NCBI RefSeq assembly: GCF_006345805.1
Contig: NC_042997.1
Coordinates: forward strand, 183,086,001-183,150,000
From: Octopus sinensis
Lineage: Eukaryota
Length of the DNA stretch: 64,000 nt
Direction: 5' to 3'
In this document: positions 1 to 57,170 of the stretch, in pieces
How positions within the stretch are numbered: the first letter of the stretch is position 1
How the letters are laid out: each line of letters opens with the position of its first letter
Made by a program: the position numbers and the translations under genes
The notes under the pieces: model-generated
Seen by the model: the letters and a program-made list of their open reading frames with translations, nothing else
What the model was told of the DNA's origin: nothing
The model's database searches: none

Positions 1-1659
1 GCCTATAAAGTGATTGATTATGAAAAAACAATAGGTAGCATTCATTCGCAAGCGAGTGTAACTTTGTAGTAATTACCATACTTTCGGTAATTATTTTAGG
101 TACTTATGTAGACGTGAACAAATATAGACACCTCGGCTCTCCTATCTTCGACTATCAAAGGCAGTTGATCGTCAGTTCAGGCAGAGAACAGCACACTGGT
201 CTTATGAAATAAACTGTGAAAAACCAGTTGAGCAGCTGACTCCAAATGAGTCATCTTCTGAAGCAGAAAAAACGATTACGAAAAGTAATCGGATGATTAA
301 CAAATCACACACACACACACACACGCCTGTCTGAATGTATAAATGTATGTCTTGAGTTATAATATTTTGCATTTTGGTTTCATTCCTTTGATGATATTCC
401 TTAATAATTAGTTCTATTTAACTAAGATTTTTATTAACAATGTATCTCGAAGATTTAGGCTAAAAAAAAAAATCTTGGGCGGAAAAAAAGACAGATTTAG
501 TTTCGATCCGAAAATAGAATGTATTTATATGTATTATAGTACTCTTCGACAAATTGCCCTGAACAATTATAACACATTTATAGATGTTATAACTTCAGCT
601 ATTTTTCTATTTTAGGGAATACATTTCCACTTTGGAAGATAAAAAGTTTAGTAAGCAACTTTTAAAATATTTATTCTCTAAGCAATTCTATTTTTCTACG
701 CCAACCAAAATACAACCTTGCGCATTTACTTGGTGATTCTTCTATCATTATCATATTTTGAGGTTATAATAAGACAGGAACATGCTCAGAGTTGTTTCTT
801 GTACTAGCTGAAATAATCTAAATAATAGTAGTCATTGAACAATATTACATAGTCTTAAAATTTTTTTTTTACCGCACAATTACTTCTAGTTAGCTTTTTA
901 ATACTGCATGCACGAAACACTTTAGCTCTAATTTAACTACTACTTTTCATGCAGAGAGGGTCTCTGAGTAATTTCTTCTCTGAATAATTTTATCATTAAA
1001 GCTTCATTGTTTACACCGTATGACGTTTTGCTTAATATATATATTCTGTTCTGTTGCTGCTACTATTACAACGGTTGCATATATAGTGTATAAAGATGCT
1101 GCCTGCTGCTTGCTATTCTAATCCTTCAACATGCCAATCCTAATAATGTTTTTATTATCGCCGTCGTCGAGGAATACTCATTATGAAATTAACGTTCGAT
1201 GGATTATGCACACCAGCTGTCATGAGCATTCCGAATAAGAACAAAAAGGACTGGATGCTGGTTTGAGGCTGAATATTGGAACGGCTTCCCGTTGTTTCCT
1301 CTGCACTTCTTAGCCGTATCACTTTTTCACAAGTTCATCACGTCAGCAAAATTAAGCGTTTTGACCATCAAAACAACTGGGCAACAATGATGGAATACAA
1401 ATCATTGATTAATTACCGTTGCATTAACAATGCTTCTTTTTTCAATGCTACACTATATTACAAAATATATCTATAGATTTTAGACACACACACACATTCT
1501 TTTACTTGTTTCGGTTATTTGACTGTGGCTATGCTTGGAGCACAACCCTTCGTCGTTATACACGATATCTTCGTGGATAGAAAGAAATTAACCGGACTCG
1601 TTTCTGGAGCTGTCGACGGAGCCACTGATTATAAATTCGTTATTACAAAGAGCTTAAAG

Positions 1660-1858
1660 GGTGGCGGAATGGTAGAATCGTTAGAGTAACGAGAGAAATG
1701 CTTTGCAGTGTTTGTGCCGGCTCTCCACCGAGATCAGATTTATCTTTCATCCCTCCGGGGTCGATAAAAATAAAGTACCAGTCAAGTATTGAGGTCGATA
1801 GTATCGGCTTACTCCCACTCCTCAAAATTACTGACCTTGCACCAAAATTAGAAACAAT
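1660..1858 (+). mobile_element. tRNA-derived SINE (family A), decayed
   Basis: Head GGTGGCGGAATGGTAGAATCGTTAG; body TTTCATCCCTCCGGGGTCGATAAAAATAAAGTACCAGTC...GGTCGAT recurs at 20590-20740, 46960-47065, 62100-62310 and inverted at 11410-11590. Confidence 0.75.
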
Positions 1859-2134
1859 TATGACTTCGGAATGACCAATTTGTACATATAATGCATTCTT
1901 GATAGCTAGGGTAGTTCTATTAATAAATTACTAGTTCGTTAATAGTATTTTGCTTCAATGCTGTGCAACACTTTAGAGTACATCTATAGATTTTAGTCAA
2001 CACTGTATGGTCTATCGGGTTTACTTAAGCTCTTAGCAATAAAGGGTTTATAAGTAGTGCCTTCATGGATAGGTTAAGAGAGTACTCAGTTGTTGAAGAA
2101 ATGGACTGAAACTAGTTTGGCTGGCACCTTTGTT

Positions 2135-2221
<87 letters not shown>
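2135..2221. repeat. compound (CTGT)n(CT)n(TA)n microsatellite
   Basis: Directly visible. Confidence 0.95.
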
Positions 2222-2228
<7 letters not shown>

Positions 2229-3001
2229 TACACACCCGTCTTCGTCTTTTGTATTTTTGTAAACTCTCACAATATATATCTGTTAGGCAAGCAGTGACCG
2301 ACAACAGAATGTTATAGTCGGGTCTTACTACGTGTCCTGACAATATATGGCTAGCTTGCCTACAAAAGTGTAAGGAGGCCGTTGAGATTTGCGCGATGAT
2401 CAAGGAAGGGGAGGACACAGTTGTGTAAGCGATAAATATGGAGTGGCAGTGGGATAGTAACGTTAATATAGTTGTCATTCAGATACACACGCGCGCGCTT
2501 TCAATCTCTTTCTGCCTCGCTCGTGTCTCTTTCTCACTTTCTCTCACTCCCTTTCTGTTTGTCTCTCCCCCTGTAACACACACACATACATACACTCACT
2601 AATCTATAGACAATTATTTAACAAAGTTTAAACCGAAATTATCCGGAAATAACCGAAGTATTCCTTTTTTCGATTTATGGACAAACGATAAAGAGTTATC
2701 GTCGGTTAAATACTTAGAGTCAAATCACTTTTCTTTTTACAAAAACGACGTTTCAAGTCAACATTGAAGGTGAAGTACCTTATTAATTTCATTTTTATTT
2801 ACAAAATTATAATCACTCATTCATCTATCTCAAAGTTAGAAAGACATATTTCTAAATGAGAAATTGCTATCAGTTAGTATCTTATCCCTTTTGGTGTTGT
2901 AATTTTCCCACGTTCTGTTCCTCAAACCATCTAAAGTTTAAACTGAAGCTGAAGTTCTTTACTGAATTTATTGAAAAATATTCAACAATTACATTAATTT
3001 A

Positions 3002-3555
3002 TTAATTCCCCCCTTTAATAAAGACATCAGTGATGGTAACTGTATGTTCAGAGCTGTGTCACTCTAGCTCAACAACAGCAGAAATTACCGAACTCTTCGG
3101 GAAGAGTCCGTACGATACATATACAATAATCGGAAGTATTTTCATTCTTTTATTTTGAATAATACAATGTAGGAATACCAAGCATACATGAGTAAGGCTG
3201 GAATATATGGCGGTAATGTTGAATTAGCTGTCATTAGTGAATTGTACAATGTTGCAATTCAGGTTAATCACAAAAATGACGATGGAATTATTCTTCCTCT
3301 GTTCACCGTTTGCGGTCGAACATTTACAGAAAGGAAGATTTTAGTGTTATACAGTGGCGAATTTGACAACGGCCACTATGATGCTCTCTTTCCCATAAAC
3401 AATCTGAAAAAATTATCTCCCTGGGCTCTATGTGAAAAGTGTGGTGTTAGGAAATGGGACAAAGAATCATTAGGTATGTCTTGTTCTAAAGGTAAAGTCC
3501 ATTTACCAATATTTGAGCCTCCATTACTTATAAAACATCTTCTTTTGGGTATCAC
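3002..3555 (+). pseudogene. Helitron RepHel N-terminal relic: OTU-like cysteine protease plus zinc-knuckle
   Basis: Frame +2 read through two TAG stops: DISDGNCMFRAVSL*LNNSRNYRTLREESVRYI...YMSKAGIYGGNVELAVISELYNVAIQV...GHYDAL (OTU Cys and His motifs, 3023-3388), then CEKCGVRKWDKESLGMSCSKGKVHLP..PPLLIKHLLLG (Helitron N-terminal CxxC...CC-GKV motif, 3431-3550). Confidence 0.85.
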
Positions 3556-3669
3556 TTCAGAATCAATATATGTATGTGTGTGTGTGTGTGTGTGCGTGCG
3601 TGTTCATGCGCGCGCGTGGATGTGTGTGTAGTTCTCCACTTTCTATGTTTTAAATACCAGATATTATAA

Positions 3670-4305
3670 TTTCCCTTGTGTATTGCATATGCAATTTCTA
3701 TCCACAAATCACAGGAAACAAGCGTCGATGGTGTCATTGTTGATTTGGGGACCGGCATTTTCTCCGACAGTATGGCTTGTGTGTCCTTGTCAAGAGCTCG
3801 CAAACTGTGCAATGTTCATTTAATTGATCTTGATCCATCGAGTTTGATCATGTGCGATTCCAGTGCTTGGAAAGAATACAACTATTTGAGAGAGCGCATT
3901 AATATGGAACCACTTCCATTGTGTAACGTGAGGCCTAAAATTATTAAACTGGCTAAAAAGGCGACTAAGAAGAGTAAAGTTGCCTTTAATATGGACAGTG
4001 AAATCATCAGCTTGCCGGAATCGAAAAAGGCTAGATTTGAGAATACGGTTGCAAAACCGTACGTCTCGCTGATCAATGAGAGAAGCGCTTTTTTTGTGAA
4101 CAGCACGATACAGGTTATCCGCCAGCTGCCTTTGTGGCCAAATACATGCAGTCTAGAAATGATATTGTCATTCGTGAAATTCACGATATTACATCTTCAA
4201 CTGGAACTAAATCGGTAGCCAACTTGAGAAATTATTGGCAGCAGGTTTAACGATGGTACTCAGCAGTGTGCGCATGATTTTTTAGAAGCACATTTATTAT
4301 TTTCT
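3670..4305 (+). pseudogene. PIF1-family Helitron/Helentron helicase C-terminus followed by a USP (peptidase C19)-like domain, decayed
   Basis: FPLCIAYAISIHKSQETSVDGVIVDLGTGIFSDSMACVSLSRAR (helicase motifs V-VI); then SLINERSAFFVNSTIQVIRQLP (USP Cys-box-like, 4066-4131) and FNDGTQQCAHDFLEAHL (QQDAxEF-like box, 4246-4296), linked by two compensating frameshifts. Confidence 0.75.
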
Positions 4306-4515
4306 GTTTGATTCTTGTAACTATTTTATCTCTCCGTATGATAATAAACAAATACAATTATTATCGATTTTATCATACATTCTTTTAATATTGTGACAGT
4401 GACACTATTTCAATTGGTCGGCCTTCGGGTATCAGTTTATTAGAGGCTGCCACACCATTAGGAAAAATACGGTACATATACAAAATATTACAAGTGTTAC
4501 CTTAAAAAGTACGAA

Positions 4516-5758
<1,243 letters not shown>

Positions 5759-6314
5759 TATATATATAGAAAGACAAATTAATCATATCTGCTTATTAAA
5801 TGCACAGTTGGCTAAAATTTATTGAGATATTGGTTGGTAGCTTCATATTTTGACAACTTTTCAAAACTTTATTACTACACAATAAAAAGTAAGCTCCAGA
5901 TGAACTGAGTATGCGAGAAAATATTGATACTCGGTTGAAACGATTTCTCTTCATCTGTATAACTATTTTCGAGAAAAAAAAAACCATGGTATCACAGCAG
6001 CCAATTTCAATTTCTGAATAAATCTAAGGCATACATACATACATACATACATACATGCATACATGTATATAAAGCGGAGCGCAAGATCCTTTTTTAAGCC
6101 GTTGTTGTGTCCCTTTTTCTCAGAGCATAACTTAACGAATAGATAATAGGGTTCGATAAAATAAGTAGTAGTTAGATTGACATAAGTACCGAGATCGATA
6201 TGAGTGACTAAACCTTTGAGGGCAGTGTCCTAGTTTGGTCGCACACAAGAAATATGAATGAACGTGTGCGTGCCTGTGTGTATTTATATATATGCAAAGA
6301 CATATGTATACATA

Positions 6315-6416
<102 letters not shown>

Positions 6417-8192
6417 GCACACACACATACATGCGTATGTATATGCGTGCGCTTTTGTGTCGCCTTGTTTTGACACCGTGCGCTAATTGTAAACAAACGA
6501 TACCGTCATAAAAACGGTGTCGTTCGGTTGAAATCTGCGATAAATGTACGGCTGTTTGTATTCAAAGAACTAAGAGAAATATTCTTTTGCCTAGGAACAG
6601 GTGAGGATTAGCGACAAGAAGAGTTTCTAGAGCAGAAAAACCTACCTCAGCGAATTTCATTGATGATAATGATATGAGCGCGTGCATGCATACACGCGTG
6701 TTGGAAGCTGATGATACACTACGTCGGAACTCACACAACCACTACAGCCCATTCGACCAAGAAGAGCTGTTCAACAATGAAACCCTAAAAGTGATCGAGG
6801 TCAAAGAACATTTAGAATATACGCACACACACACACATATAACAATCCATAGAAGAGGTAGCTATAGCTGCACAAGCTATCAAAACTACGCCATCAATAT
6901 GTGTGTGTGCGTGCGCGCGTACGTGAGAGTTTAGTAAACCACAGAGACCGTCTGAAACTGCAATGGATATGTAAGAAACAAGTTAACCTAAAGAAATAAC
7001 TAATCTATATAAAGCGACAATTCTGCAAGAATAACAAACCAGCGAAATATATATTGGATCAACAAACAGCTAATTCAAAGATAGAAACACATAACACATA
7101 CACTCTTTCAGCAATTTTTATAGTAGAGATGCAACGTCTCTACTATACACATTTAGAGTATAAGAAAGATTAATGTAAATATAAATATTAACTGGATAGT
7201 AATAGACAGTATAACTCTCAATAGAAATAGTTTCATGAAATACTCCTTGTAATCCCCTTTACCCCTTAGAAAATTTCAGCGTAGTTATGCAAGAAATATA
7301 CCTGCCAACAGAAGAATGAGTTGATGTAACGTTGTAGATAGCAGATTAGGGAAAGCAAAAATAGTAAATATCTGCTGTTGCAACAGCAGCAAGAAAAACT
7401 GTACACAGTTTATAATGATAATGTCAACAGCAACAGAACAGTAATACAAAATAACCAATAAATTAACCAACGGAAAGAATGGCAATTTAGAGATATCACA
7501 TATATGATACGAACCTCAAAAATAGGCATATAAAAACGGTTTACACGCCCTTAGATACGATATAACTTGGCATACAATGAAGTTACATAATAACAATTTT
7601 AACGAAACAGGTGATGTTGTTCGCAGGTAACAAGTGAATTGGGCAATGAAAGAAATAAAGAAATAAACAACTTAACAAACCAGGATATGAATACAAAATT
7701 ATCAAACAGAATCTGGGTAACAACTGCATTTGCCGATAAACGACGATAACACAAAATGAAAAATGTGTGAATTAAACACAAATTACAACTCATAAAAATA
7801 GCAAAGCCGGCTAATGAAAACAGAACAACCAACGAATTGGCAAATGAAACAACTGCAACCAGTCAATGCTTTAATAAAAACAACATTTAGAACGGATTAA
7901 TAAAACCAATAATCATTCACAAAAGAATGAATCCATTCTGATATATAAAACCAGCTCGAAATAATGGACGCCCTCCCTAGTATTCAGTTTAAATATAAAA
8001 TACGTCATGTATTCCTTACTTCATTCCTCTTCCATTGACAATCTTTAACACTTGAATGTGCACACATATATAGCGGAAATTGCCTATTGTGATCACTGTG
8101 AGACGAAGCCTTTTCGATTACAATAATCGACCGCTAACATTAAGCAAAAGGAGGGCTTGGAAACGTTTAGTTAAAATTATCTGTGACTTTAA

Positions 8193-8580
8193 GGAGGAAG
8201 CACTCCGTCGGTTACGACGATGAGGGTTCCGGTTGATCCGAATCAACGGAACAGCCTGCTCGTGAAATTAACGTGTAAGTGGCTGAGCACTCCACAGACA
8301 CGTGCACCCTTAACGTAGTTCTCGGGGATATTCAGCGTGACACAGAGAGTGACAAGGCCGGCCCCTTGAAATACATGTACAACAGAAACAGGAAGTAAGA
8401 GTGAGAGAAAGTTGTGGTGAAAGAGTACAGCAGGGATCACCACCACCCCCTGCCGGAGCCTTGTGGAGCTTTTAGGTGTTTTCGTTCAATAAACACTCAC
8501 AACGCCCGGTCTGGGAATCGAAACCGCGATCCTATGACCGCGAGTCCGCTGCTCTAACCACTGGGCCACTGCGCCTCCAC
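8193..8580 (-). mobile_element. tRNA-derived SINE (family B, OR-like head), young
   Basis: Minus-strand head GTGGAGGCGCAGTGGCCCAGTGGTTAGAGCAGCGGACTCGCGGTCATAGGATCGCGGTTTCGATTCCC (A and B boxes); 10-bp TSD GTGACTTTAA at 8183-8192 and 8581-8590; near-identical copy at 62539-62932. Confidence 0.9.
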
Positions 8581-8600
8581 GTGACTTTAATAACTGTATA

Positions 8601-8841
8601 GTGGAGGCGCGTGGCTTAGTAATTAGAGTTTTGGACTCATGATCGTAAGATAGTGGTTTCGATTACTGAACCGGGCGACACGTTGTGCTCTTGAACAAAA
8701 CACTTCATTTCACGTTACTCCAGTCAACTCAGCTGGCAAAAATAAGTAATCGTGCGACGGACCGGCGACCCGTCCAGGTGGGGAATACATACGTCACAGA
8801 AACCGGTCCTATGAGTCCAGGATTCGGGAAGGAACTTTTCT
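8601..8841 (+). mobile_element. tRNA-derived SINE with CORE-like and V-like central segments
   Basis: Head GTGGAGGCGCGTGGCTTAGTAATTAGAG...GGTTTCGATTAC; CGTTGTGCTCTTGAACAAAACACTT (CORE-like); GCGACGGACCGGCGACCCGTCCAGG (V-domain-like); TSD ACTGTATA at 8593-8600 and 8842-8849. Confidence 0.85.
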
Positions 8842-9150
8842 ACTGTATAGAAGTTGTATGATGACAGGCATAACCACAGTTAAGAAAAAGAACTTCTGTT
8901 TGTGTGCATGTATTGTACGTATGCATGATAAATGCTTATCATTTATCTTTTACTTGTTTCAGTTATTAGACTGCAGCAATTCCGGGGTACCGCCTTGAAG
9001 AATTTTAGTCGAAAAAATCGACTCCAGTACTTTTTTTTTTTTGGTCTCTCTCTTTTACAGAACCGGTAATTTATGGGGACGTAAACACACCAGCACCAGT
9101 TGTTAAGCGGTGGGGGACAAAGACACACACACACACATATATATATATAT

Positions 9151-9363
9151 ATGTGACCTCGTCTGTATCACTAGCGATTTTTTTCCCGTCTTCCCTTCTC
9201 GGGATCTTTCTTTCTCCCATGTTTCCGACGAAGAGCTCCGCTCGAAACGTCAAACCCTCCTTCTTCCCTTCTTCCCTTCTTTCCTGAGCGTCCAATAATA
9301 CTTTATTTGTTCCACATCCTTACGTTGTTTTTTTGTTTTTGTTTTCTTGTTTGGATTAACTTT
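9151..9363 (+). mobile_element. short (about 210 bp) Penelope-end/retrozyme-like element carrying a hammerhead motif
   Basis: Same boundaries (ATGTGACCTC ... GGATTAACTTT) as the copy at 23242-23450; both sit in TA runs. Confidence 0.7.
9221..9255 (+). ncRNA. minimal type I hammerhead ribozyme (U4C core variant)
   Basis: P1 GTTT/AAAC; core CCGACGA plus an extra A; P2 GAGC-TCC-GCTC; GAA; palindromic P3 ACGT; cleavage-site C. Confidence 0.65.
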
Positions 9364-10322
9364 ATATATATATATATCATGATGGGTTTCTTATAGTTTC
9401 CATCAACCAATTCACTCACAAGGCTTTGATCAGCTCGAGACTATATAGTAGAAGATACTTGCCCAAGGTGCCACGCAGTGGGATAGAATCCGAAACCACG
9501 TGGTTTAGAAGCAAACTTCTTACCACAAAGCGACGCCTGTTCTGATTTTTGTTTTTTTTTACTTTTCCATTTTTCGGTTTATCCGCAATTACAGATGACT
9601 GCTGTATTCATTCATTTATTACTTCTATGTTAATAGCAAAATATAGAATTAATGCATGTGAGGAGAATGAATACAGAGAATACTAACCTCACACAGGTTA
9701 TCAAGTTTAAAAAAATAAGTGCCACTCCCATTTTGTTGTTTGCAGTCACCCAACTGTAAAACGTACGTCGCACTCTTTCACACAATCACATATAGTGACC
9801 ACATAAGCAAATATAAAAATTGTTTTATGTTTATTTATTAGTTACAGTCTTTGAATCATGACTATGCTGGAGCACACCTACAAGAGTTTAGTCGATTATA
9901 CCAAACACAGTAATTTGTTTATTGGTTATTAATCTTGGTTTGTAGAAAAGTAAAGTGAAACGGGACGTAAAAGAAAAGGACGTCACTTAATTTAAAGTTA
10001 TTGGGATTTTAGCATGCATAGCCAGTGGTCGGGGTGCGCTATATATATTTTATGGCACTTTATTTTTTTCTTTTGAAATTTTGCGCTTTTAGGAATAGTG
10101 CGCCAAAAACAATTGCATCTAGGGGCCCGCCTACGCTACCCAGCTACTTATATTGACTCCTGTACACTTATGCTTTCATTTTACCGATTTTGTAAGAGAC
10201 AAAAAGCAAAATCCATAGTCCACCTTCGCGGAATGTCAGGGACTAAAACGACGTATTTTTCATCGACAACGTTTTCTACGGTCATTCCTCTACCTATTAG
10301 TCATATAGATATATAATTTGAA

Positions 10323-10607
10323 AAGGTACTACTTAAGAAGAGTGGTCCCGGTGCGCGCACTCGCGCAAGCTAGTCGTGACTAGTCGATCCTTACTTTGTG
10401 TTTTTGTTTTATTTACTTTGTTTAAAAAATTATTTACTTTGTGTTTTTGTTTTATTTATTTTGTTTTAAAAAATTATTTACTTTGTATAAAAAAAATATT
10501 TATTTTGTGTTTTATTTACTTTGCTAGGTAGTCGTTGTAGGATCGACTAGTCACGACTAGCTAGCGCGGATGCGCGTACCGGGACCACTCTACTTAAGTA
10601 GTACCTT
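10323..10607. mobile_element. MITE, Kolobok-like, 68-bp TIRs, TGAA target duplication
   Basis: TIR AAGGTACTACTTAAGAAGAGTGGTCCCGG...GACTAGTCGATCCT with about 5 mismatches; TGAA at 10319-10322 and 10608-10611; interior is an approximately 43-bp T-rich tandem repeat. Confidence 0.85.
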
Positions 10608-11409
10608 TGAAAATGTGATGTATAATATACATTTTTTTTAAAAATGAGCATTCAACTTTAGCTTCGCTGTGAAAAGTAAACAAAGTAGTTACAGGTTTTA
10701 TATCTCCGTCGATAGAAAAAGAGGGATATTATCTTCCCATTTCTTTTTATATATAACTAAAAGATAAATTATAATTTATTAAAAAATTGTGAATACATCT
10801 ACTTGAATTGTACAAATATAGAAGAATTCCTACTGTTACTTTTCGCTGTTTTTGTGATTAGAAAATGGAAAGAAAAGATTATAGGAAGAACGAAAAATAG
10901 ATTTATCAACCTATTTATCGGATAAATGGCACGTGATAATCCTATTTAATGCAAATGTTCCTCCATGTTCGCTTAAATTCATAACATTTGTGTTTGTGTG
11001 TGCGAGAGAATTTTCATGTGACCGTTATAGAATCCTAATTACGGTTTTCGCTGTATTTCGAAGAGGAATGGGATGTTGTGACGTTCACACCCTTCTCAAG
11101 AGTTTTTACAGTGTAAATTAAAGAAAATTGTTTTAAACAGGTGGCAAATTCTTACGCAAGACATTTGTCATCTAATTCATATTAATATTATTATTCTTTT
11201 TTACTTTAGCACGAAACCATAATTTGAGAGCGAGAGATGCAGTCGACTGAATCCATACTTGTTTGGTATTTATTTTATGTTTTGATCCCAGCTAGATGAA
11301 AAGGAAAGTTGGTCCCGGTGGGATTCGAACTAAAGCATTTTATCCAGTTCTAAACTGATTCTGTTATATTACTATGGATTTCTTGCAAATTAAAAGACCG
11401 TACATTTGT

Positions 11410-11590
11410 GGGGAGCTGTTATTGGTCGCATTGTGTCACAGCACAACTGATACTTAATTTATCCACCCTACTTCTAGAAATAAAAAGCGAAGTCGAAACT
11501 GGTGGGATTTGAACTCAGAATATAGAGGACGAAAATTAATAATGCGAGGTTTTATTCAGTTCGGTGTTAAATTGTTTCTGCTATTTCATT
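11410..11590 (-). mobile_element. family A SINE, decayed
   Basis: AACTGATACTTAATTTATCCACCC...GTCGAAACTGGTGGGATTTGAACTCAGAA is the reverse of the family A body and B box. Confidence 0.6.
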
Positions 11591-23459: not shown

Positions 23460-24341
23460 TCATCATCATCATCATCGTTTAGCGTCCGTTTTCCATGCTA
23501 GCATGGGTTGGATGGTTCTACTGGGGTCTGTGAAGCCAGAAGGCTTCATCAGGCCCAGTCAAATCTGGCAGTGTTTCTACGGCTGGATGCCCTTCCTAAC
23601 GCCAACCACTCCGTGAGTGTAGTGGGTGCTTTTTACGTGCCACCCGCACAGGTGCCAGACAGAGCTGGCAAACGGCCACGAACGGATGGTGCTTTTTATG
23701 TGCCACCGGCATGGGGGCCAGGCGAGGCTGGCAACGGACTTGAACGGATGGTGCTTTTTACGTGCCACCGGCATGAGGCCAGTCGGGGAGGCGCTGGCAA
23801 CGGTCGCGAAACGGAAGGTTCTCTTACATGCCACCGGCACTGGTAACACATCTGCAATTTCCATTGATCGATTTCAATTCTGATCCTCACTTGCCTCAAC
23901 AAGTCTTCACAAGTAGAGTTTTGTGTCCCAAGAAGGTATGCATACGTAGGCTGGCTCCATCCCATGTAGAAGGCCATGGGTTATGGACTCACTTGTCCTG
24001 CCGGGTCTTCTCGCGCACAGCACACTTCCAGAGGTCTCGGTCTCTAGTCATTTCCTCAGTGAGACCTAAAGTTCAAAGGTCGTGCTTCACCACCTCGTCC
24101 CAGGTTTTCCTGGGTCTGCCTCTTCCGCAGGTTCCCTCAATCGCTAGGGTGTGGCACTTTTTCACACAACTATCTTCATCCATTCTCGCCACATGACCAT
24201 ACCAGTGCAAACGTCTCTCTTGCACACCACAACTGATGCTTCTTAGGTCCAGCTTTTCTCTCAAGGTACTTACACTCTGCCGAGTATGAGTACTGACATT
24301 ACACATCCATCGGAGCATACTGGCTTCATTTCTTGCGAGCT

Positions 24342-35350: not shown

Positions 35351-35972
35351 ATGCCTAACCGAAAACGATCAATGCTCTGTTCCAAAAGGAATGCCCTCCT
35401 AAAACAGCGAAAAAGGGAGTTGCGTTCACAGGTATGTTTTTCAACATTCATATCATTTCGATTTCGCTTCCACACATTCTCGTGTATCCCATTTAAATAT
35501 TGCACTTTCATATGTGCTCTACTATTCCTTTCAGGAAACACCAGAAGCAAGAGAGGCCCGTCTTGCTGCACAGCGTAGTCGTGATCAACGTTCACTACTC
35601 GAGGAGTCAGCAGAAGCAAGGCAGGCTCGTCTTGCTGCCCAGCGTCATCGTGATCAATGCTCACTACTTGATAAGCCTATTGATGCAAGGCAGGCCCGTC
35701 TTGCTTCTATGCATATTCGAAATCAGCACACACTCTTTCAGGAGTCAGCAGAAACAAAGCAGGCCCGTCTTGCCAGCCAGCGTAATCGTAATCGACGCTC
35801 ACTTCTTGAGGCTAGGAAAAACTGGTTAGCAGGTCTATGTCAAAGAAATGTTGCTGCTGCAAGGGGCACATTTTGGATGAGAGCTGGCTTCAGATACAGG
35901 CCTGCAGATGATTTCTCCAATCACCCAGACGTGACCTTTGATAAAATGGACAGGGAATGCCAATTTTGTTGA
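35351..35972 (+). CDS. two-exon Helitron-type N-terminal ORF: basic NLS-like exon plus four 23-aa STPR repeats, ending in a premature stop in the zinc-knuckle (spliced product 172 aa)
   Basis: Exon 35351-35431 MPNRKRSMLCSKRNALLKQRKRELRSQ; phase-0 intron CAG|GTATGT ... TTTCAG (35432-35534); exon ETPEAREARLAAQRSRDQRSLLE-type repeats x4, then AGFRY...MDRECQFC*; VKKWAGEAAGLCCSGSKVRL continues past the stop to about 36040. Confidence 0.6.
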
Positions 35973-47065: not shown

Positions 47066-47799
47066 AATATATATGTATATATGTATATATATTATATGTA
47101 TATATATGTATATATATGTGTATATATATATGTATATATGTGTATATGTATATATATGTATATATATGTATATATATGTGTATATATATGTATATATGTG
47201 TATATGTATATATATGTATATATATATGTATATATATGTATATATATATATGTATATATGTATATATATGTATATATATATATATGTTTATATATGTATA
47301 TATATATATGTATATATATAGGTATGTATATATTGTAATATATATATATGTATATATATATGTATGTTATATATATGTTATATATGTATATATTATATAT
47401 ATATGGTATATATATGTATTATATGTATATATATATATAATGTATATATGTATATATATATATGTTTATATGTATATATATATATGTATTATATGTATAT
47501 ATATATGTATATTATATGTATATTATATGTATTATATGTATATATATATATGTATTATATGTATATATATATGTATTATATGTATATATATATATGTATT
47601 ATATGTATATATATATGTATTATATGTATATATATATGTATTATATGTATATATATATATGTATTATATATATGTATTATATGTATATATATATATGTAT
47701 TATATGTAATATATTATATGTATTATATGTATATATATATATGTATTATATGTATATATATATATATATAGTATTATATGTATTATATGTTATATGTAT

Positions 47800-47832
<33 letters not shown>

Positions 47833-49283
47833 TATGTATTATATGTATATATATATATATGTATATATATATATAATATATGTATTATATGTATATATAT
47901 ATATATGTATTATATGTATATATATATATATGTATATATATATATGTATATATATATATATGTATATATTATGTATTATATGTGTATATATATATATGTA
48001 TTATATGTATATATATATATATGTATATATATATATGTATTATATGTATTATATGTATATATATATGTATATATATAATATTTATATGTATTATATGTAT
48101 ATATATATATGTATATATATATATGTATTATATGTATTATATGTATATATATATGTATTATATGTATATATATGTATTATATGTATATATATATGTATAT
48201 ATATATGTATTATATGTATATATATATGTATTATATGTATATATATATATGTATTATATGTATATATATATATGTATTATATGTATATATATATATGTAT
48301 ATATATATGTGTATTATATGTATATATATATGTATATGTATATATATATATGTATATGTATATATATATATGTATTATATGTATATAATGTATTATATGT
48401 ATATATATGTATTATATGTATATATATGTATTATATGTATATATATGTATTATATGTATGTATATATATGTATTATAGTATATATATATATGTATATATG
48501 ATATATATTATGTATTATATGTATGTTATATATGTATTATATGTATGTATATATATGTATTATATGTATGTATATATATATATGTATTATATGTATATAT
48601 ATATATTATATGTTTGTATATATATGTATTATATGTATATAATATATGTATTATATGTATATATATATATGTATTATATGTATATATATATATGTTTATA
48701 TATATATATATGTATTATATGTATATATATATATGATTATATATGTATATATATATATGTATATATATGTATATATATATATGTATTATATGTATATATA
48801 TATATGTATTATATATATATATATATATTGTATTATATGTATATATATATATGTATTATATATGTATATATATATGTATTATATATGTATATATATATAT
48901 GTATTATATGTATATATATATATGTATTATATGTGTATATATATATATGTATTATATGTATATATATATATATGTATTATATGTATATATATATATATGT
49001 ATTATATGTATATATATATATATGTATTATATGTATATATATATATATGTATGTATATATATATATGTATATGGCGTTAGGAAGGGCATCCAGCCGTAGA
49101 AACACTGCCAGTTTGACTGGGCCTGATGAAGCTTTCTGGCTTCACAGATCCCAGTGGAACTGTCCAACCCATGCTAGCATGGAAAACGGACGCTAAACGA
49201 TGATGATGATATATATATGTATTATATGTGTATATATATATATATATATATGTATGTATATATATATATGTATTATATGTATG

Positions 49284-49314
<31 letters not shown>

Positions 49315-49485
49315 TATATGTATGTATATATAATATATATGTATGTATATATATATTATATGTATGTATATATATATATATGTATGTATGTATATATATA
49401 TTTATATGTATGTATATATATATATTTATATGTATGTATATATATATATTTATATGTATGTGTTATATATATATTTATATGTATG

Positions 49486-49575
<90 letters not shown>

Positions 49576-49773
49576 TATGTATATATGTATGTATGTATGT
49601 ATATATGTATGTATGTATGTATATATGTATGTATATATGTATGTATGTATGTATGTATATATATATATATGTATGTATATATATATGTATGTATATATAT
49701 ATATGTATGTATGTATATATGTATGTATATATATATGTATGTATATATGTATGTATGTATATATGTATGTATG

Positions 49774-49807
<34 letters not shown>

Positions 49808-49942
49808 TGTATATATGTATGTATGTATGTATATATGTATGTATATATATATGTGTGTATATAATATGTATATGTGTTATATATATATGTATGTGTGGTA
49901 TATATATATATGTATGTATATATATATATGTATGTATATATG

Positions 49943-49975
<33 letters not shown>

Positions 49976-50207
49976 TATATGTATGTATATATATATATAT
50001 GTATGTATATATATATGTATGTATATATATAATATATGTATGTAATATATATTATGTATGTATATATATATATATGTATGTATATATATATGTATGTATA
50101 TATATATATGTATGTATATATATATATATGTATGTATATATAATATATGTATGATATATATATGTATGTATATATATATTATATGTATGTATATGTGTTG
50201 TATATAT
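47066..50207. repeat. large compound (TA)n/ATGTATTAT/(TATG)n satellite block with an embedded RTE 3' fragment at 49073-49210
   Basis: Directly visible; source of the long YI/CV-repeat pseudo-ORFs. Confidence 0.95.
49073..49210 (+). mobile_element. 138-bp RTE 3' end, copy 1
   Basis: GGCGTTAGGAAGGGCATCCAGCCGTAG...GGACGCTAAACGATGATGATGAT. Confidence 0.9.
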
Positions 50208-53200
50208 CATCATCATCATCGTTTAGCGTCCGTTTTCCATGCTAGCATGGGTTGGACGGTTCTACTGGGGTCTGTGAAGCCAGAAGGCTTCATCAGGCCC
50301 AGTCAAATTGGCAGTGTTCTACAGCTGGATGCCCTCTAACGCCAACCACTCCGTGAGTGTAGTGGGTGCTTTTTACGTGCCACCCGCACTGGTGCCAGAC
50401 AGAGCTGGCAAACGGCCACGAACGGATGGTGCTTTTTATGTGCCACCGGCACGAGGGCCAGGCGAGGCTGGCAACGGACACGAAACGGGGCGGTGCTGGC
50501 AACGGTCGTGAAACGGAAAGTTCTCTTACATGCCACCGGCACTGGTAACACATCTGCAATTTCCATTGATCGATTTCGATTCTGATCGTCACTTGCCTCA
50601 ACGGGTCTTCACAAGCAGAGTTTGACATGCCACCGGCACTGGTAGCACATCCGCAATTTCCATTGATCGATTTCGATTCTGATCCTCACTTGCCTCATCA
50701 CGTCTTCACAAGTAGAGTTTTGTGTCCCAAGAAGGAAGGTATGCATACGTAGGCTGGCTCCATCCATGTAGAGGCCACGGGTTATGGACTCACTTGTCCT
50801 GCCGGGTCTTCTCGCGCACAGCACACTTCCAGAGGTCTCGGTCTCTAGTCATTTCCTCAGTGAGACCTAAAGTTCGAAGGTCGTGCTTCATCACCTCGTC
50901 CCAGGTTTTCCTGGGTCTGCCTCTTCCACAGGTTCCCTCAACCGCTAGGGTGTGGCACTTTTTCACACAACTATCTTCATCCATTCTCGCCACATGACCA
51001 TACCAGCGCAAACGTCTCTCTTGCACACACAACTGATGCTTCTTAGGTCCAGCTTTTCTCTCAAGGTACTTACACTCTGCCGAGTGTGAGTACCGGCATT
51101 ACACATCCATCGGAGCATACTGGCTTCATTTCTAGCGAGCTTACGCATATCCTCAGCAGTCAGCCCATGTTTCACTGCCATGTAGCATGGCTGTTCGTAC
51201 ACACGCATCATACAGTCTGCCTTTCACTCTGTGCGAGAGGCCTTTTGTCACCAGCAGAGGTAAGAGCTCTCTGAACTTTGCCCAAGCTATTCTTACTCTA
51301 GCAGTTACACTTTCAGCACACCCGCCCCCGCTGCTGACTTGGTCACCTAGGTAACGGAAACTATCAACTATTTCTAGTTTTTCTCCCTGGAAAGTGACGG
51401 AAGTTGGTCTCAGAGCATTTTCAGTGTTTATTGTTCCTGCACATACAAAAACCATCTTCCTAGTTAGCCTTCCTTTGACATTGCTGCATCTCTTATGTGT
51501 CCATAGCTTACACTGGTGCATCTTATAGAGTTTCTACCTACACCTTTTCTACAGATCGAGCAGGGCCATCTACCTGAAGGTGTTGTGATTTGTCTACCTT
51601 CCTACTGATTACGACTTTGGTTTTAGCTAGATTGACTCTGAGGCCCTTCGATTCTAATCCTTGTTTCCACACCTGAACTTCTCCTCCAGTTCTGATAGCG
51701 ACTCAGCAATTAGAGCAAGGTCATCAGCATAGAGGAGCTCCCAAGGGCATCCTGTCTTGAATTCCTCCGTTATTGCCTGGAGGACTATGATAATAGGAGG
51801 GGGCTGAGTACTGAGCCTTGGTGGACCCCTACCTCTACCCGGAATTCTTCACTGTACTCATTTCCAACCCTCACCCTACTAGCGGCGTCCCTATACATGG
51901 CCCGCACAGCTCTCACTAACCATTCATCTATCCCTAGTTTTCTCATTGCCCACCAGATAAGGGATCGGGGGACCCTGTCGAAGGCTTTCTCCATGTCAAC
52001 AAAAGCCAGGTACAGGGGCTTATCTTTGGCTAGGTATTTCTCCTGCAGCTGCCTTACCAGGATATTAGCAATCAGTAGTACTTTTCCCTGGCACAAACCC
52101 AAACTGCATCTCATCTAAACTAACTCTCTCTCTAATTAGTTGGGCTATGACCCTCTCCGTAACCTTCATCACCTGGTCCAACAGCTTGATACCTCTGTAG
52201 TTATTTGTATCTAGGGCATCACCTTTACCTTTGTAGCAGTGGACTATTATACTGCTACACCAGTCATTGGGTATGACCCCTTTGTGTATCACCTGATTAA
52301 CTATACGGGTGACTAGGCTATAGCCGACACTACCAGACATTTTGAGCATCTCTGCAGTGATTCGTGATGGGCCTGGGGCTTTCCCTGTCTTCATGCTTCT
52401 AATTGCCTTAGCTACCACGGAACTATCAACTCGGATAGCTGGTCCCTATGTTGGGTCAACATTCGGCAGACTCTCTTATCCCATTCATTTTCTTCATTCA
52501 GCAACCTTTCATAGTGGCATCTCCAAACCTCTCTCTTTGCATCCTCATTTAGCGCAAGTGAACCATCTTCCATGCGAACACACTTCTCTCTCCCCACATC
52601 ACGATTCTCTCTCACACACTGTCTTGCAACACGAAACACCTCCAGTCTTTGGTCCTCACGGCGCAGAACATTGGCAAATTTTTCTTTATTGCTTCCCCTC
52701 TGGCTAAATAAACCTTCTCCTAGCTTCTTTTGGCAGTCTGATACAATCCCCTGCTACCCCATTTTTCCAGACCTTCCAAGCCTGTCTCTTTTCTCTAATA
52801 GCCCTGTCTACAATATTGTTCCACCACCACGTTATTCTAGGTCGAGAGGGGACTTTGCACCAGCCACAGATCTGGTCAGTGGCTCTCAGCAGGTTGTCCC
52901 TTAGAAACGTCCAGCTGTCTTCTACCCCTGTGATGCTCTATCCCTTTACTTCGTCAGAGGCTTCAAGTAATATGTCCCTAAATCTCTGTCCATTTGCAGG
53001 ATCTTTAAGCTTCCAGATCCTTCTCTCCATATTTGTCGTCTTCTGGTTGTCCTCCTAGTCCTGATCCTAAAGTCACTAACTACCAGTCTATGTTGTGGGG
53101 TACATTCTTCACCTGGGAAGGTTTTGGCATTTATAAGCAGCCATCTCTCCCTTTGCCTTGTAAGGATGTAGTCAATTTGGCTGGTATGTTGGCCCGATTG

Positions 53201-54190
53201 GTAAGTGACTAGGTGGCTGGTAGGTTCCTGAAGTTAGTGTTGCAAATCATAAGATTATTTGCATCGCAGAACTCCAGCAGCCTGGTTCCCTCCTCGTTGC
53301 GGGAGCCATAGCCATAGCCTCCATGTACGCCATGGAAGCCCCCAGCATGTCGTCCAACGTGACCATTGAAGTCACCAGCCTCAAAGATAAGGTCTCTGTC
53401 GTTCGTCAACGAGGTAGTCTGCAGTAGAGTGTCATAGAATCGGTCTTTCTGTCCATCGGGTAGCCCCGACTGAGGAGCATAGGCTGATATAATGGTTGCT
53501 AAACTATGATGAAGCACTAATAATCTTAAGTTCTGTCACATACTCTGATTACCTCAATTACTTTATCTACCCATTTCTCAGCGATAAGTATACCCACGCC
53601 ACCAACCCCGTCAGTGTTCCCTGCCCAGAAAATCTTGTACCTGCGTTCCTTGCCTGTGAGGAACCTAGCTGATCCTCCTCTCCACCTTATTTCTTGCATG
53701 CAACATATATCCACACATCTCCGTTCAAGCATCTCGACTATCTCACCAGACCTACCTTTCAGAGTGCCAACGTTGAGGGTGCCAACCCTGAGGGTGGGGA
53801 AGCATGGGCTCTAGAGACCCTGGGACGGTGGACAGTAGCTCGTGTACCTGAAAAGAAAGCTCGCATTTGGCAGAATTCATGTGCAAGAAATGAAGTAGTA
53901 AAGTAGCCTTCAGTACAACCTGCATAACGCTAGCCTTTCATATTTTGCACTGTATGAACATTACCTTACATAGGTCGAGACTAGGGGTAGGAGGGGTAGG
54001 GATGGTGAGAACATTTGCAGTCTTCATGGGAGGCAACCCCGGAATGGCAGAGAATAGGAACTTCCGGCATGCGTGGTGGGGGGGGGAGGGCGGGTGCTGC
54101 ACGTGTCTGAGTAAAGAGGTTCTGTTAATCGTATGAGCTAGCAAATGGGTTTGTATGAATCGGGAGACAACACTAACGAAAATTGAAAAA
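50208..54190 (-). mobile_element. near full-length RTE-clade LINE (APE plus RT), frameshifted
   Basis: APE: VDICCMQEIRWRG..GVGILIAEKW, ISAYAPQ, GDFNGHVG; RT: LAFVDMEKAFDRVP, GVHQGSVLSPLL, ELLYADDL, FRYLG; 3' UTR with internal tandem duplications and (GAT)n tail. Confidence 0.95.
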
Positions 54191-56502: not shown

Positions 56503-56508
56503 TATATG

Positions 56509-56543
<35 letters not shown>

Positions 56544-56626
56544 TATGTATGTATGTATGTATGTATTATATGTATGTGTATATATATGTATGTATGTATG
56601 TATATATATATGTATGTATGTATGTA

Positions 56627-56659
<33 letters not shown>

Positions 56660-56906
56660 ATATGTATGATGTATATATGTATGTATGTATATATGTATGT
56701 ATGTATATAGTATGTATGTATATATATATGTATGTATGTATATATATATGTAAGGTATTATATGTATGTATTGTATTATATATTATGTATGTATATATAT
56801 TATATGTATTATATATAGTATGTATGTATATATGTATGTATGTATGTAGTTGTATATATGTATGTATGTATATATGTATGTATGTATATATGTATGTATG
56901 TAGTAT

Positions 56907-56942
<36 letters not shown>

Positions 56943-57170
56943 TATGTATTGTATATATTATATATATGTATGTAGTATATATATATGTATATATATATAT
57001 GTATGTATATATATATATATGTAATATATATATATGTATGTATATATATATGTATGTGTATATATATATGTGTATGTATGTATGTATATATATATGTATA
57101 TGTATGTATGTATATATATATGTATATGTATGTATGTATATATATATGTATGTGTATGTATGTAATATAT
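56503..57170. repeat. (TATG)n/(TA)n satellite
   Basis: Directly visible. Confidence 0.95.

What the first reader, a model, noticed from the sequence alone, without database searches (positions are those of the whole stretch)
3002..4305. Rolling-circle transposon relic carrying two unrelated deubiquitinase-like domains (OTU upstream, USP/C19 downstream of the helicase)
Seen in sequence: an OTU Cys motif (DGNCMFRAVS) and His motif (GHYDAL) fused to the Helitron zinc-knuckle. After the PIF1 motif V-VI segment there is a USP-like Cys box (SLINERSAFFVNSTIQVIRQLP; TTT at 4090 is one substitution from catalytic TGT) and, via two compensating frameshifts (KYMQSRNDIVIREIHDITSSTGTKSVANLR in frame +3), IIGSRFNDGTQQCAHDFLEAHL, which matches the USP F..G.QQDA.EFL box. 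The ORF track misses the second box because it lies past a stop. Established: OTU and C48 proteases occur in Helitron/Helentron RepHel proteins, and Helentrons usually carry an APE endonuclease after the helicase. I do not know of a described family with a C19/USP domain in that position. Inference: an ancestral RepHel that manipulated host ubiquitin signalling with dual DUBs, as some DNA viruses do.
Basis: partly seen in the sequence, partly recalled or inferred. Interest (0 to 1): 0.82.

Follow-up and report, generated by a model that had tools for sequence, protein, structure and literature searches.

The report
Dead octopus Helitron with OTU and USP domains
This is a decayed, internally deleted copy of an octopus rolling-circle transposon whose ancestral transposase carried two deubiquitinase domains (OTU in front, USP behind the helicase); the reading is correct, but USP domains in this transposon group were already reported in 2024, so it is a new example and not a new kind.

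Summary
Window ~2961-5271 (+) is a dead Helitron-like element.

- **OTU domain:** Pfam OTU 58.6 bits, E=1.2e-15. The catalytic Cys and His motifs are intact, but there are two TAG stops.
- **Middle of the element:** a zinc-knuckle and a (GT)n tract, then a ~3.2-kb internal deletion that removed Rep and most of the helicase.
- **Helicase end:** PIF1 motifs V-VI and a linker.
- **USP/C19 domain:** only the first ~80 residues remain.

A profile built from relatives outside this locus scores the frame-corrected window USP segment at 40.9 bits (E=2e-11). A locus collinear with the window in Octopus bimaculoides keeps the whole domain: a 416-aa ORF, Pfam UCH 30.6 bits (cut-off 23.9), with a predicted fold that matches only USPs.

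Distant relatives carry DUF6570, Rep, PIF1 and UCH in single ORFs of 1,749-2,746 aa, with the catalytic Cys, His and Asp conserved. A fuller independent octopus copy has the order OTU, Rep, helicase, USP.

In the window, TTT at 4090 replaces the catalytic TGT; a close paralog keeps Cys. The two compensating frameshifts are real.

Window-versus-collinear-copy divergence matches the flanks (OTU dN/dS 1.0), so the relic is evolving neutrally.

HELIANO (NAR 2024) already lists UCH as a recurrent HLE2 domain. The finding is a new member of a known kind, of modest interest.

The parts
2961..3002 (+). Leader of the OTU protein (TEFIEKYSTI...), one frame off from the OTU domain because of a frameshift near the C-run at ~3000
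   Evidence: The translation matches residues 5-14 of the paralog P0059 (MKSLTEFIEKYSTI...). tblastn of P0059 covers 2990-3403.
3005..3400 (+). OTU cysteine-protease domain. Cys motif DGNCMF at 3032-3049 (Cys codon 3041-3043), His motif GHYDAL at 3371-3388, TAG stops at 3065 and 3170
   Evidence: Pfam PF02338 58.6 bits, E=1.2e-15. Coordinates. 71% identical to the O. bimaculoides OTU protein P0059.
3401..3562 (+). N-terminal zinc-knuckle segment of the RepHel (CEKCGVRKWDKESLGMSCSKGKVHLP...). It joins the OTU directly because 429 bp present in L002 (6530-6958) are missing here
   Evidence: tblastn and blastn to L002 6943-7168. L002 ORFs.
3563..3668 (+). (GT)n microsatellite plus a short spacer. 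It is native to the element (same position in L002 7135-7178). The internal deletion junction lies at ~3668
   Evidence: Window 3603 and 3668 map to L002 7168 and 10464, so about 3.2 kb holding Rep and most of the helicase is missing. L001 shares the same deletion.
3669..3830 (+). C-terminal end of the PIF1-like helicase (motifs V-VI: FPLCIAYAISIHKSQ...MACVSLSRARK)
   Evidence: UvrD_C_2 15.8 bits, weak. 78% identical to the PIF1-like protein P0002. The family profile hits PIF1 structures at E=3e-34.
3831..4065 (+). Helicase-to-USP linker (basic, KKATKKSK...), in frame with the helicase
   Evidence: Continuous ORF 3676-4218. The linker aligns in the octopus copies and lies in the same position in distant relatives.
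4066..4306 (+). N-terminal ~80 residues of a USP/C19 domain. Cys box 4066-4131 (catalytic position is TTT at 4090-4092), -1 frameshift ~4134, -2 ~4230, Q-Q-x-A-x-x-F box ~4255-4278, +1 ~4278
   Evidence: Family HMM 40.9 bits, E=2e-11.
4306..4310 (+). Junction of a ~929-bp deletion (L001 ~10531-11459) that removed the zinc ribbon, His box, Asp, stop codon and the start of the 3' non-coding region
   Evidence: blastn 2524-4311 maps to L001 8732-10533 and 4310-4922 maps to L001 11461-12058. Alignments A1 and A3.
4311..4515 (+). 3' non-coding region of the element
   Evidence: Shared with the independent copies L002 (to window 4450) and L006 (to window 4536).
4516..5271 (+). 3'-terminal long palindrome (arms 4516-4642 and 5143-5271). 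The element ends ...TTCAACTCTAG|T at 5270/5271
   Evidence: Inverted repeat at 87% identity. DNA fold z=-12.6. The terminal 20-mer occurs only at these two sites in the window. L002 and L006 end with the same ...CAATTCTAGT, followed by unrelated DNA, and carry different deletion derivatives of the palindrome.

Best explanation
Window ~2961-5271 is a non-functional, internally deleted copy of a Helitron-like rolling-circle transposon of octopods. By its closest full-length relatives it most likely belongs to the HLE2 group.

The ancestral autonomous element encoded, in this order:
- an OTU protease;
- a basic linker;
- a zinc knuckle;
- the Rep (HUH) nuclease;
- a PIF1-like helicase;
- a linker;
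- a complete USP/C19 deubiquitinase fused in frame to the end of the helicase.

The element ended in a long palindrome with ...CTAG|T at its tip.

This copy then lost:
- 429 bp between OTU and the zinc knuckle;
- ~3.2 kb holding Rep and most of the helicase. This deletion is shared with the collinear O. bimaculoides locus, so it predates the split of the two loci (two species or an old duplication);
- ~929 bp holding the C-terminal two thirds of the USP domain, in the window lineage only.

It also picked up two stops, four frameshifts and a Cys-to-Phe change at the USP active site.

Shown here: the anatomy, the homologies, the fused helicase-USP architecture and the neutral decay.

Inferred: in the live element, both domains removed ubiquitin or a ubiquitin-like modifier. 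The likely purpose was to stabilise the transposase or the host replication and repair factors it uses. This rests on analogy with the experimentally active VTD deubiquitinases of Helentrons.
For: **Domains in the window.**
- OTU profile hit, 58.6 bits.
- The USP fragment scores 40.9 bits, E=2e-11, against an independent family HMM.

**Collinear locus L001.**
- Flanks and relic are both 93-95% identical to the window.
- A 416-aa ORF runs from the helicase into the USP domain.
- Pfam UCH scores 30.6 bits, above the cut-off of 23.9.
- The predicted fold matches only USPs: top 50 hits, E down to 2e-9.

**Independent fuller copy L002.**
- OTU 6369-6566, zinc knuckle 6943-7133, Rep 7546-8481 (Helitron_like_N 44.8 bits), helicase 8522-10588 (PIF1 43.8 bits), linker, USP 10901-11428.
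- Its flanks are unrelated to the window's.

**Further copies.** L004 and L006 (O. vulgaris) also have the helicase followed by the USP domain.

**Distant relatives.**
- P0017, P0048 and P0022 have DUF6570, Helitron_like_N, PIF1 and UCH in one protein. UCH scores are 75.9, 32.8 and 30.7 bits.
- P0017 is one uninterrupted 6.7-kb ORF.
- The Cys box, QQDA box, two CxxC pairs, SGHY His box and Asp are conserved in the relatives.
- Paralog P0005 keeps the Cys.

**Neutral decay.** OTU dN/dS is 1.00 and identity equals that of the flanks.

**Shared 3' terminus** in three copies.

**Literature.**
- UCH is a recurrent HLE2 domain (PMC11417382).
- Helentron VTD deubiquitinases cleave K48- and K63-linked chains (PMC9741609).
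Against: - No octopus copy seen here is intact. It is therefore not proven that OTU, RepHel and USP were one polypeptide in the octopus ancestor; OTU could have been a separate upstream exon or ORF.
- The distant full-length relatives have no detectable OTU. The OTU-plus-USP combination rests on two independent octopus insertions (window/L001 and L002).
- The HLE2 marker DUF6570 was not detected in any octopus copy.
- The 5' terminus was not found.
- HELIANO states that UCH, among 17 domains, lies in a different ORF from RepHel. That differs from the fused ORFs seen here.
- Deubiquitinase activity and its role in transposition are untested for any Helitron USP or OTU.
Confidence: 0.88

Rival explanations
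1. The USP-like stretch is a chance resemblance in decayed AT-rich DNA, made to look better by choosing frames.
For: Part of the quoted box ('LEAHL') is out of frame.
Against: - The family HMM scores the segment at 40.9 bits, E=2e-11, and the raw fragment is the top hit in the window.
- It is 87% identical to a protein that passes Pfam UCH.
- The fold and PDB profile matches are to USPs.
Confidence: 0.01
2. The USP piece is a recent, copy-specific capture of a host USP gene fragment by one Helitron, as is typical of Helitron gene capture. It would not be a functional module of the transposase.
For: Helitrons often capture gene fragments. HELIANO interprets the extra domains as ancient captures and places UCH in a separate ORF. 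The closest solved structures are host-type USP12/USP46.
Against: - The helicase-linker-USP junction aligns from helicase motif VI to the His box in relatives only 24-35% identical, from an insect (Cacopsylla) and from unnamed assemblies.
- It lies inside single ORFs of up to 2,746 aa.
- The catalytic residues and zinc ligands are conserved in the relatives. That implies long purifying selection within the element lineage.
- An ancient capture as the ultimate origin remains compatible with all of this.
Confidence: 0.06
3. The locus is a domesticated host gene (annotated as LOC128249111 in O. bimaculoides) encoding a catalytically dead pseudo-deubiquitinase derived from the transposon.
For: - O. 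bimaculoides keeps a 416-aa open frame across the helicase end and the USP domain, and NCBI annotates a 346-aa protein there.
- The insertion is old and shared by both loci.
- dN/dS for the helicase end and linker is 0.42.
Against: - The window copy has three frameshifts and a 929-bp deletion in the same region.
- The L001 ORF ends prematurely at ...KWDII*, whereas paralog P0010 continues ...KWDVISDETLVN.
- The active-site Cys is lost in both copies, and L001 has a net 9-bp loss (13 bp against 4 bp) in the Cys box.
- The 0.42 rests on 8 synonymous and 13 non-synonymous changes. Non-coding flanks treated the same way give 0.62-0.90.
- OTU dN/dS is 1.00, and divergence equals that of the flanks.
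Confidence: 0.04
4. OTU and helicase-USP come from two different elements that landed side by side. On this reading it is not one element with an internal deletion.
For: In the window the two parts are separated by a microsatellite, and Rep is absent. The distant full-length USP-bearing relatives lack OTU.
Against: L002, at an unrelated site, has the same OTU, zinc knuckle and (GT)n segments, followed by Rep, helicase and USP, in the same orientation. Each segment is 88-94% identical to the window's.
Confidence: 0.05

Closest known systems
UCH-bearing HLE2 Helitron-like elements (HELIANO subgroups c and d; Li et al., NAR 2024, PMC11417382)
   Same: Both are rolling-circle RepHel elements with a Pfam UCH (USP/C19) domain at a conserved position. 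The full-length relatives found here also carry the HLE2 marker DUF6570.
   Different: - The published cases come mostly from lungfish and axolotl. UCH is described only at survey level, as lying in an ORF separate from RepHel.
- Here the USP is fused in frame to the helicase C-terminus.
- The hosts include octopods and a psyllid insect.
- The octopus family also has an OTU.
- Membership of subgroup c or d could not be tested.
Helentron RepHel proteins with VTD (herpes-tegument-like) deubiquitinase, with or without OTU (Erven et al., Nat Commun 2022, PMC9741609)
   Same: Both are HLE2-type transposases with one or two deubiquitinase domains of unrelated folds, including OTU, in animals that include molluscs. 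They suggest the same function. The VTDs were shown to cleave ubiquitin and NEDD8 and K48/K63 chains.
   Different: The second DUB there is a VTD placed N-terminal, and those elements carry a C-terminal AP endonuclease. Here the second DUB is a USP/C19 domain in the C-terminal position, and no endonuclease was seen.
Helraiser / canonical Helitron (HLE1) RepHel, PDB 7lcc
   Same: The Rep and PIF1-like helicase core matches: the helicase end of the family profile hits Helraiser at E=8e-18. Both have a 3' hairpin near a CTAG end followed by T.
   Different: Helraiser has no protease domains. The 3' hairpin here is a very long terminal palindrome. The best relatives carry DUF6570 (HLE2).
Cellular USP12/USP46-type ubiquitin-specific proteases
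   Same: Same fold and motif set: Cys box, QQDA box, zinc-ribbon CxxC pairs, His box and Asp. They are the best PDB sequence matches at E~1e-23, and the fold matches.
   Different: Sequence identity is only ~13-16%. The transposon domains are compact (~270 aa) and sit at the C-terminus of a transposase. The window copy is truncated and lacks the catalytic Cys.

Membership tests
Helitron-like element (RepHel rolling-circle transposon) | Rep/HUH nuclease domain (Pfam Helitron_like_N) | tested here: not met
   It is absent from the window copy, removed by the ~3.2-kb deletion at ~3668. It is present in the paralogous copy L002 at 44.8 bits. The family qualifies; this copy is a relic.
Helitron-like element (RepHel rolling-circle transposon) | PIF1-like SF1B helicase | tested here: met
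   Only motifs V-VI remain (3669-3830). They are 78% identical to the PIF1-like protein P0002. The family profile hits PIF1 structures at E=3e-34. L002 has PIF1 at 43.8 bits.
Helitron-like element (RepHel rolling-circle transposon) | Defined 3' terminus with a hairpin, shared by independent copies and followed by unrelated DNA | tested here: met
   The window (5271), L002 and L006 all end ...TTCAA(T/C)TCTAGT and then diverge. The window palindrome is 4516-5271, fold z=-12.6.
Helitron-like element (RepHel rolling-circle transposon) | Defined 5' terminus | tested here: inconclusive
   No independent copy seen here extends upstream of window 3213, and P0059 reaches only ~2961. The 3'-terminal 20-mer has no third match in the window.
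HLE2 group (Helentron / Helitron2) | DUF6570 domain upstream of Rep (HLE2 marker according to HELIANO) | tested here: inconclusive
   It is present in the full-length relatives P0017 and P0048, and in P0022 as a C-terminal fragment (48.9, 57.8 and 24.8 bits). It was not detected in any octopus copy, where that region is deleted or decayed.
HLE2 group (Helentron / Helitron2) | C-terminal AP endonuclease (Helentron subclass only) | tested here: not met
   There is no Exo_endo_phos hit in the window, in L002 or in the full-length relatives. The position after the helicase is occupied by UCH.
USP / peptidase C19 (Pfam UCH PF00443) | Profile match above the curated cut-off | tested here: met
   The window fragment alone scores 11.8 bits, below the cut-off. 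It is 87% identical to P0001, which scores 30.6 bits against 23.9. It scores 40.9 bits against the family HMM. Relatives reach 80.4 bits.
USP / peptidase C19 (Pfam UCH PF00443) | Catalytic Cys in the Cys box | tested here: not met
   The window has Phe (TTT 4090-4092), and L001 has Phe plus a net 9-bp loss. Cys is present in paralog P0005 and in 12 of 13 relatives.
USP / peptidase C19 (Pfam UCH PF00443) | QQDA box, zinc-ribbon CxxC pairs, His box (GHY) and Asp | tested here: not met
   The window keeps only the Q-Q-x-A-x-x-F box (QQCAHDF). Everything downstream is deleted at ~4306-4310. L001 has the CxxC pairs and SGHY, and the relatives also have the Asp.
USP / peptidase C19 (Pfam UCH PF00443) | USP fold | tested here: met
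   The AlphaFold2 model of P0001 (pLDDT 60, core 70-86) was searched against the PDB. All top 50 hits are USPs: E 2e-9 to 1e-6, TM 0.38-0.55. This was tested on the collinear copy, because the window fragment is too short.
OTU cysteine protease (Pfam PF02338) | Profile match plus catalytic Cys and His motifs | tested here: met
   58.6 bits against a cut-off of 23.3, with DGNCMF and GHYDAL present. The reading frame is broken by TAG stops at 3065 and 3170 and by an upstream frameshift, so it is not expressible.

The most novel reading that the evidence does not exclude
Octopods host, or recently hosted, an HLE2 lineage whose single RepHel polyprotein carries two unrelated deubiquitinases: an N-terminal OTU and a C-terminal USP fused directly to the helicase. 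This domain combination and fusion have not been described; published cases are VTD plus OTU, or UCH listed as a separate ORF. Intact family members with conserved catalytic residues would be the first transposon-encoded USPs open to biochemical testing.
Probability: 0.5. Interest if true: 0.45.

Novelty: new member of a known kind. Interest (0 to 1): 0.3.

Why it matters
The relic itself does nothing. Its value is as a pointer to a family.

It led to RepHel transposases with a catalytically conserved USP domain fused in frame to the helicase. These occur in octopods and a psyllid insect, and in unnamed assemblies.

Together with the known OTU and VTD cases, this means Helitron-like elements have acquired at least three different deubiquitinase folds. 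That argues that removing ubiquitin or a ubiquitin-like modifier gives rolling-circle transposition a recurrent advantage. No one has tested a transposon USP or OTU biochemically.

The result also corrects a likely mis-annotation: O. bimaculoides LOC128249111 looks like a transposon fragment, not a host gene.

Tried and rejected
It scored only 11.8 bits, which is not decisive. The question was settled through the collinear copy and a family HMM.
- **Other copies inside the window.** None were found.
- **OTU in the distant full-length USP-bearing relatives.** None was found by Pfam or BLASTP. The OTU-plus-USP pairing therefore cannot be generalised beyond octopods.
- **OTU homolog search for a full-length annotated octopus RepHel.** It returned only two short proteins.
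- **Organism names for the long relatives.** None are on record; the sources are Logan, ENA and JGI.
- **HELIANO supplements**, sought for the position and species of UCH. They are not held.
- **A separate MITE at 4516-5271.** I first read the inverted repeat this way. I rejected it because L002 and L006 carry different deletion derivatives of the same palindrome at the same element end.
- **Domestication of the O. bimaculoides ORF.** Rejected on the broken window copy and the neutral divergence.
- **A third copy of the terminal 20-mer as a candidate 5' inverted repeat.** None was found.
Full report
**1. What is in the sequence.**

The window is AT-rich, microsatellite-laden animal DNA.

OTU region:
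- In the frame that starts at 3005 there is an OTU domain. DGNCMF lies at 3032-3049 and GHYDAL at 3371-3388. TAG stops at 3065 and 3170 interrupt it.
- Pfam OTU scores 58.6 bits, E=1.2e-15, against a cut-off of 23.3.
- The domain runs straight into a zinc-knuckle segment (CEKCG at 3431-3445).
- A (GT)n tract follows at ~3563-3630.

Helicase and USP region:
- From 3676 a 180-aa ORF begins with PIF1 helicase motifs V-VI.
- It continues through a basic linker into SLINERSAFFVNSTIQVIRQLP.
- The pieces AKYMQSRNDIVIREIHDITSSTGTKSVANLR and IIGSRFNDGTQQCAHDF follow, in shifted frames.

**2. Is the USP call more than chance?**

Three other lines settle the question.

- A protein search found O. bimaculoides LOC128249111 (P0001, 346 aa). 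It is 87% identical over 82% of the query and scores 30.6 bits on Pfam UCH, above the cut-off of 23.9. It has a His box, SGHYTSIVRNQDKW.
- An HMM was built from 12 relatives that exclude this locus.
  - It ranks raw fragment 4228-4308 first among the 2,695 six-frame fragments of the window (E=1.9e-4).
  - It scores the frame-corrected segment at 40.9 bits, E=2e-11.
- A profile of the family hits USP46 and USP12 structures at E~1e-23 and PIF1 structures at E=3e-34.
  - An AlphaFold2 model of P0001 has mean pLDDT 60, with the core at 70-86.
  - Its 50 best PDB matches are all USPs: USP2, USP46, USP14, USP30, USP21 and USP12 among them.

**3. The collinear locus and the lesions.**

P0001 lies on O. 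bimaculoides chromosome CM046601.1 (locus L001). L001 is collinear with the window well beyond the relic. Window 3-1486, 1496-2009, 2524-4311, 4310-4922 and 6691-8192 all align in order. Gap-free identity is 93-95% in flanks and relic alike. L001 is therefore the orthologous locus of a sister Octopus species, or an old segmental duplicate.

Both copies share the junction from OTU, zinc knuckle and (GT)n into the helicase end. The large internal deletion therefore predates their split.

L001 has a 416-aa ORF that stays open from the microsatellite through the helicase end and the whole USP domain.

Relative to L001, the window has these differences:
- -1 at ~4134;
- -2 at ~4230;
- +1 at ~4278;
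- a ~929-bp deletion at ~4306-4310 (L001 ~10531-11459). It removed the zinc ribbon, the His box, the Asp and the stop codon.

The +1 is new.

L001 has damage of its own:
- a net 9-bp loss (13 bp against 4 bp) in the USP Cys box;
- a 2-bp deletion exactly at the OTU catalytic Cys codon.

**4. The catalytic Cys.**

TTT at 4090-4092 aligns with the catalytic Cys column, which 12 of 13 relatives keep (xSCYANSxxQ). A 68%-identical paralog from an unnamed sequencing-run assembly (Logan; organism not on record) (P0005) reads LINERNVCFVNSTIQ, against the window's LINERSAFFVNSTIQ.

**5. Is the helicase normally followed by this domain?**

Yes. An exhaustive HMMER search with P0001 returned 55 proteins. 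Many align from helicase motif VI through to the His box.

- P0017 (2,245 aa), P0048 (2,746 aa) and P0022 (1,749 aa; cluster-mate P0057 is 2,097 aa) carry DUF6570, Helitron_like_N, PIF1, Pif1_2B and UCH in a single protein. UCH scores are 75.9, 32.8 and 30.7 bits.
- P0017 is one uninterrupted 6.7-kb ORF on its contig.
- The relatives conserve the Cys box, the QQDA box, two CxxC pairs, the SGHY His box and the downstream Asp. That points to selection for an active enzyme.
- A named relative with the helicase-USP junction comes from the psyllid Cacopsylla melanoneura, where the protein is annotated 'PIF1' (P0061: Pif1_2B plus UCH, 56.3 bits). The profile also hits a stand-alone USP-domain protein of the sponge Amphimedon queenslandica (P0073), which has no helicase part, so it may simply be a host USP.

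**6. Do OTU and USP belong to one element?**

L002 (O. bimaculoides CM046603.1) is an independent and fuller copy. Its homology to the window is confined to window 3213-4450. Its layout is as follows:

| Module | L002 coordinates | Pfam score |
|---|---|---|
| OTU | 6369-6566 | |
| Zinc knuckle | 6943-7133 | |
| (GT)n, same position as in the window | 7135-7178 | |
| Rep | 7546-8481 | Helitron_like_N 44.8 bits |
| Helicase | 8522-10588 | PIF1 43.8 bits |
| Linker | 10602-10886 | |
| USP | 10901-11428 | |

The window relic is therefore one element with about 3.2 kb missing between ~3668 and the helicase end. It also lacks 429 bp (in frame) between OTU and the zinc knuckle.

Two more independent copies also show the helicase followed by linker and USP: L006 in O. 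vulgaris and the Logan contig L004.

The distant full-length relatives have no OTU. The OTU-plus-USP pairing is so far specific to octopods. Whether both sat in one polypeptide is not proven, because every octopus copy seen here is degenerate.

**7. The element's 3' end.**

I first took the inverted repeat 4516-4642 / 5143-5271 for a separate MITE. That reading is wrong.

- L006 shares sequence with the window up to 4536. It ends in a short hairpin, ACTAGAATTG...CAATTCTAGT.
- L002 jumps from window-equivalent 4450 directly to ...GCATTTTTCAATTCTAGT.
- The window ends ...GCGCATTTTTCAACTCTAGT at 5271.
- After that point all three copies diverge.

The element therefore ends in a long terminal palindrome (fold z=-12.6). 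The tip reads ...CTAG|T. L002 and L006 are independent deletion derivatives of that palindrome. The relic spans about 2961-5271.

**8. Selection.**

Between the window and L001, OTU plus zinc knuckle gives dN/dS = 1.00. The helicase end and linker give 0.42, from 8 synonymous and 13 non-synonymous changes. Non-coding flanks treated the same way give 0.62-0.90.

Add the frameshifts, the deletions and the lost catalytic residues, and there is no sign of domestication. LOC128249111 is most likely an annotated transposon fragment.

**9. Comparison with what is known.**

- HELIANO (PMC11417382):
  - It lists UCH among 20 extra domains stably included in Helitron-like elements.
  - UCH is almost exclusive to HLE2 and enriched in subgroups c and d, which come mostly from lungfish and axolotl.
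  - The paper states that it lies in an ORF separate from RepHel.
- Erven et al. (PMC9741609):
  - Helentron RepHels carry active VTD deubiquitinases.
  - 121 of them also carry OTU.
  - The authors suggest that these protect proteins needed for transposition from degradation.
- A 2026 repeat annotation of O. vulgaris reports Helitron families but no domain content.

A USP domain in a Helitron-like element is therefore not new, and neither is the dual-DUB idea. Three details are incremental:
- the in-frame fusion to the helicase C-terminus;
- the occurrence in cephalopods and an insect;
- the OTU-plus-USP pairing.

**10. Mechanism.**

Shown:
- the anatomy and decay of the relic;
- the conserved fused architecture;
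- the conserved catalytic residues in live-looking relatives.

Inferred: the ancestral transposase used OTU and USP activities on ubiquitin or a ubiquitin-like modifier, probably to stabilise itself or the host replication and repair factors it recruits. This rests on analogy with the Helentron VTDs.

The copy in this window is inert.

**11. Verdict.**

- Novelty: a new member of a known kind.
- Interest: modest.

Noticed in passing
window 1-9000 versus L001 (O. bimaculoides CM046601.1:173147377-173168417): The window is collinear with this O. bimaculoides locus well beyond the transposon, at 93-95% gap-free identity. The window probably comes from a sister Octopus species, or from an old segmental duplicate. 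This comparison is what allowed each lesion to be assigned to a lineage.
   Followed up: partly
L001 10001-11041 (O. bimaculoides LOC128249111, P0001): The annotated 'uncharacterized protein' starts inside helicase motif VI and ends inside the USP His-box region (…KWDII*). It lacks the catalytic Cys. It looks like a mis-annotated Helitron fragment, not a host gene.
   Followed up: partly
window 3563-3668; L002 7135-7290: The (GT)n tract after the zinc knuckle sits at the same place in an independent copy, so it is native to the element. It starts with GTATGT and the spacer ends ...TACCAG, so it might be an intron of the RepHel gene. L002 has an assembly gap there, so this could not be checked.
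   Followed up: no
L001 ~9252 and ~10299-10308: In the O. bimaculoides copy, both active-site cysteines were hit by small deletions: 2 bp at the OTU Cys codon and a net 9 bp in the USP Cys box. In the window, the OTU Cys codon is intact and the USP Cys is replaced by Phe.
   Followed up: yes
L004 (Logan SRR11869391 contig) 570-3632, minus strand: Next to the USP fragment that keeps the catalytic Cys lies a second Rep-helicase fragment in the opposite orientation. The two may be nested or rearranged Helitron copies.
   Followed up: no
window 47067-50194, 54190-55709, 56502-58397: Very long degenerate (AT)n / (TATG)n arrays of up to 3.1 kb. They explain the GC troughs (down to 0.14) and the extreme GC skew seen in the composition profile.
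   Followed up: no
window 23625-23782 and 50528-50720: Tandem units of 62 bp and 97 bp share a ...GCCACCGGCA... core and lie in GC-richer patches. They may be SINE-related repeats.
   Followed up: no
window 35542-35811: A 69-bp tandem repeat (3.9 copies, 70% matches), GC-rich and a multiple of three in length. It could encode a 23-residue protein repeat. It was not examined.
   Followed up: no
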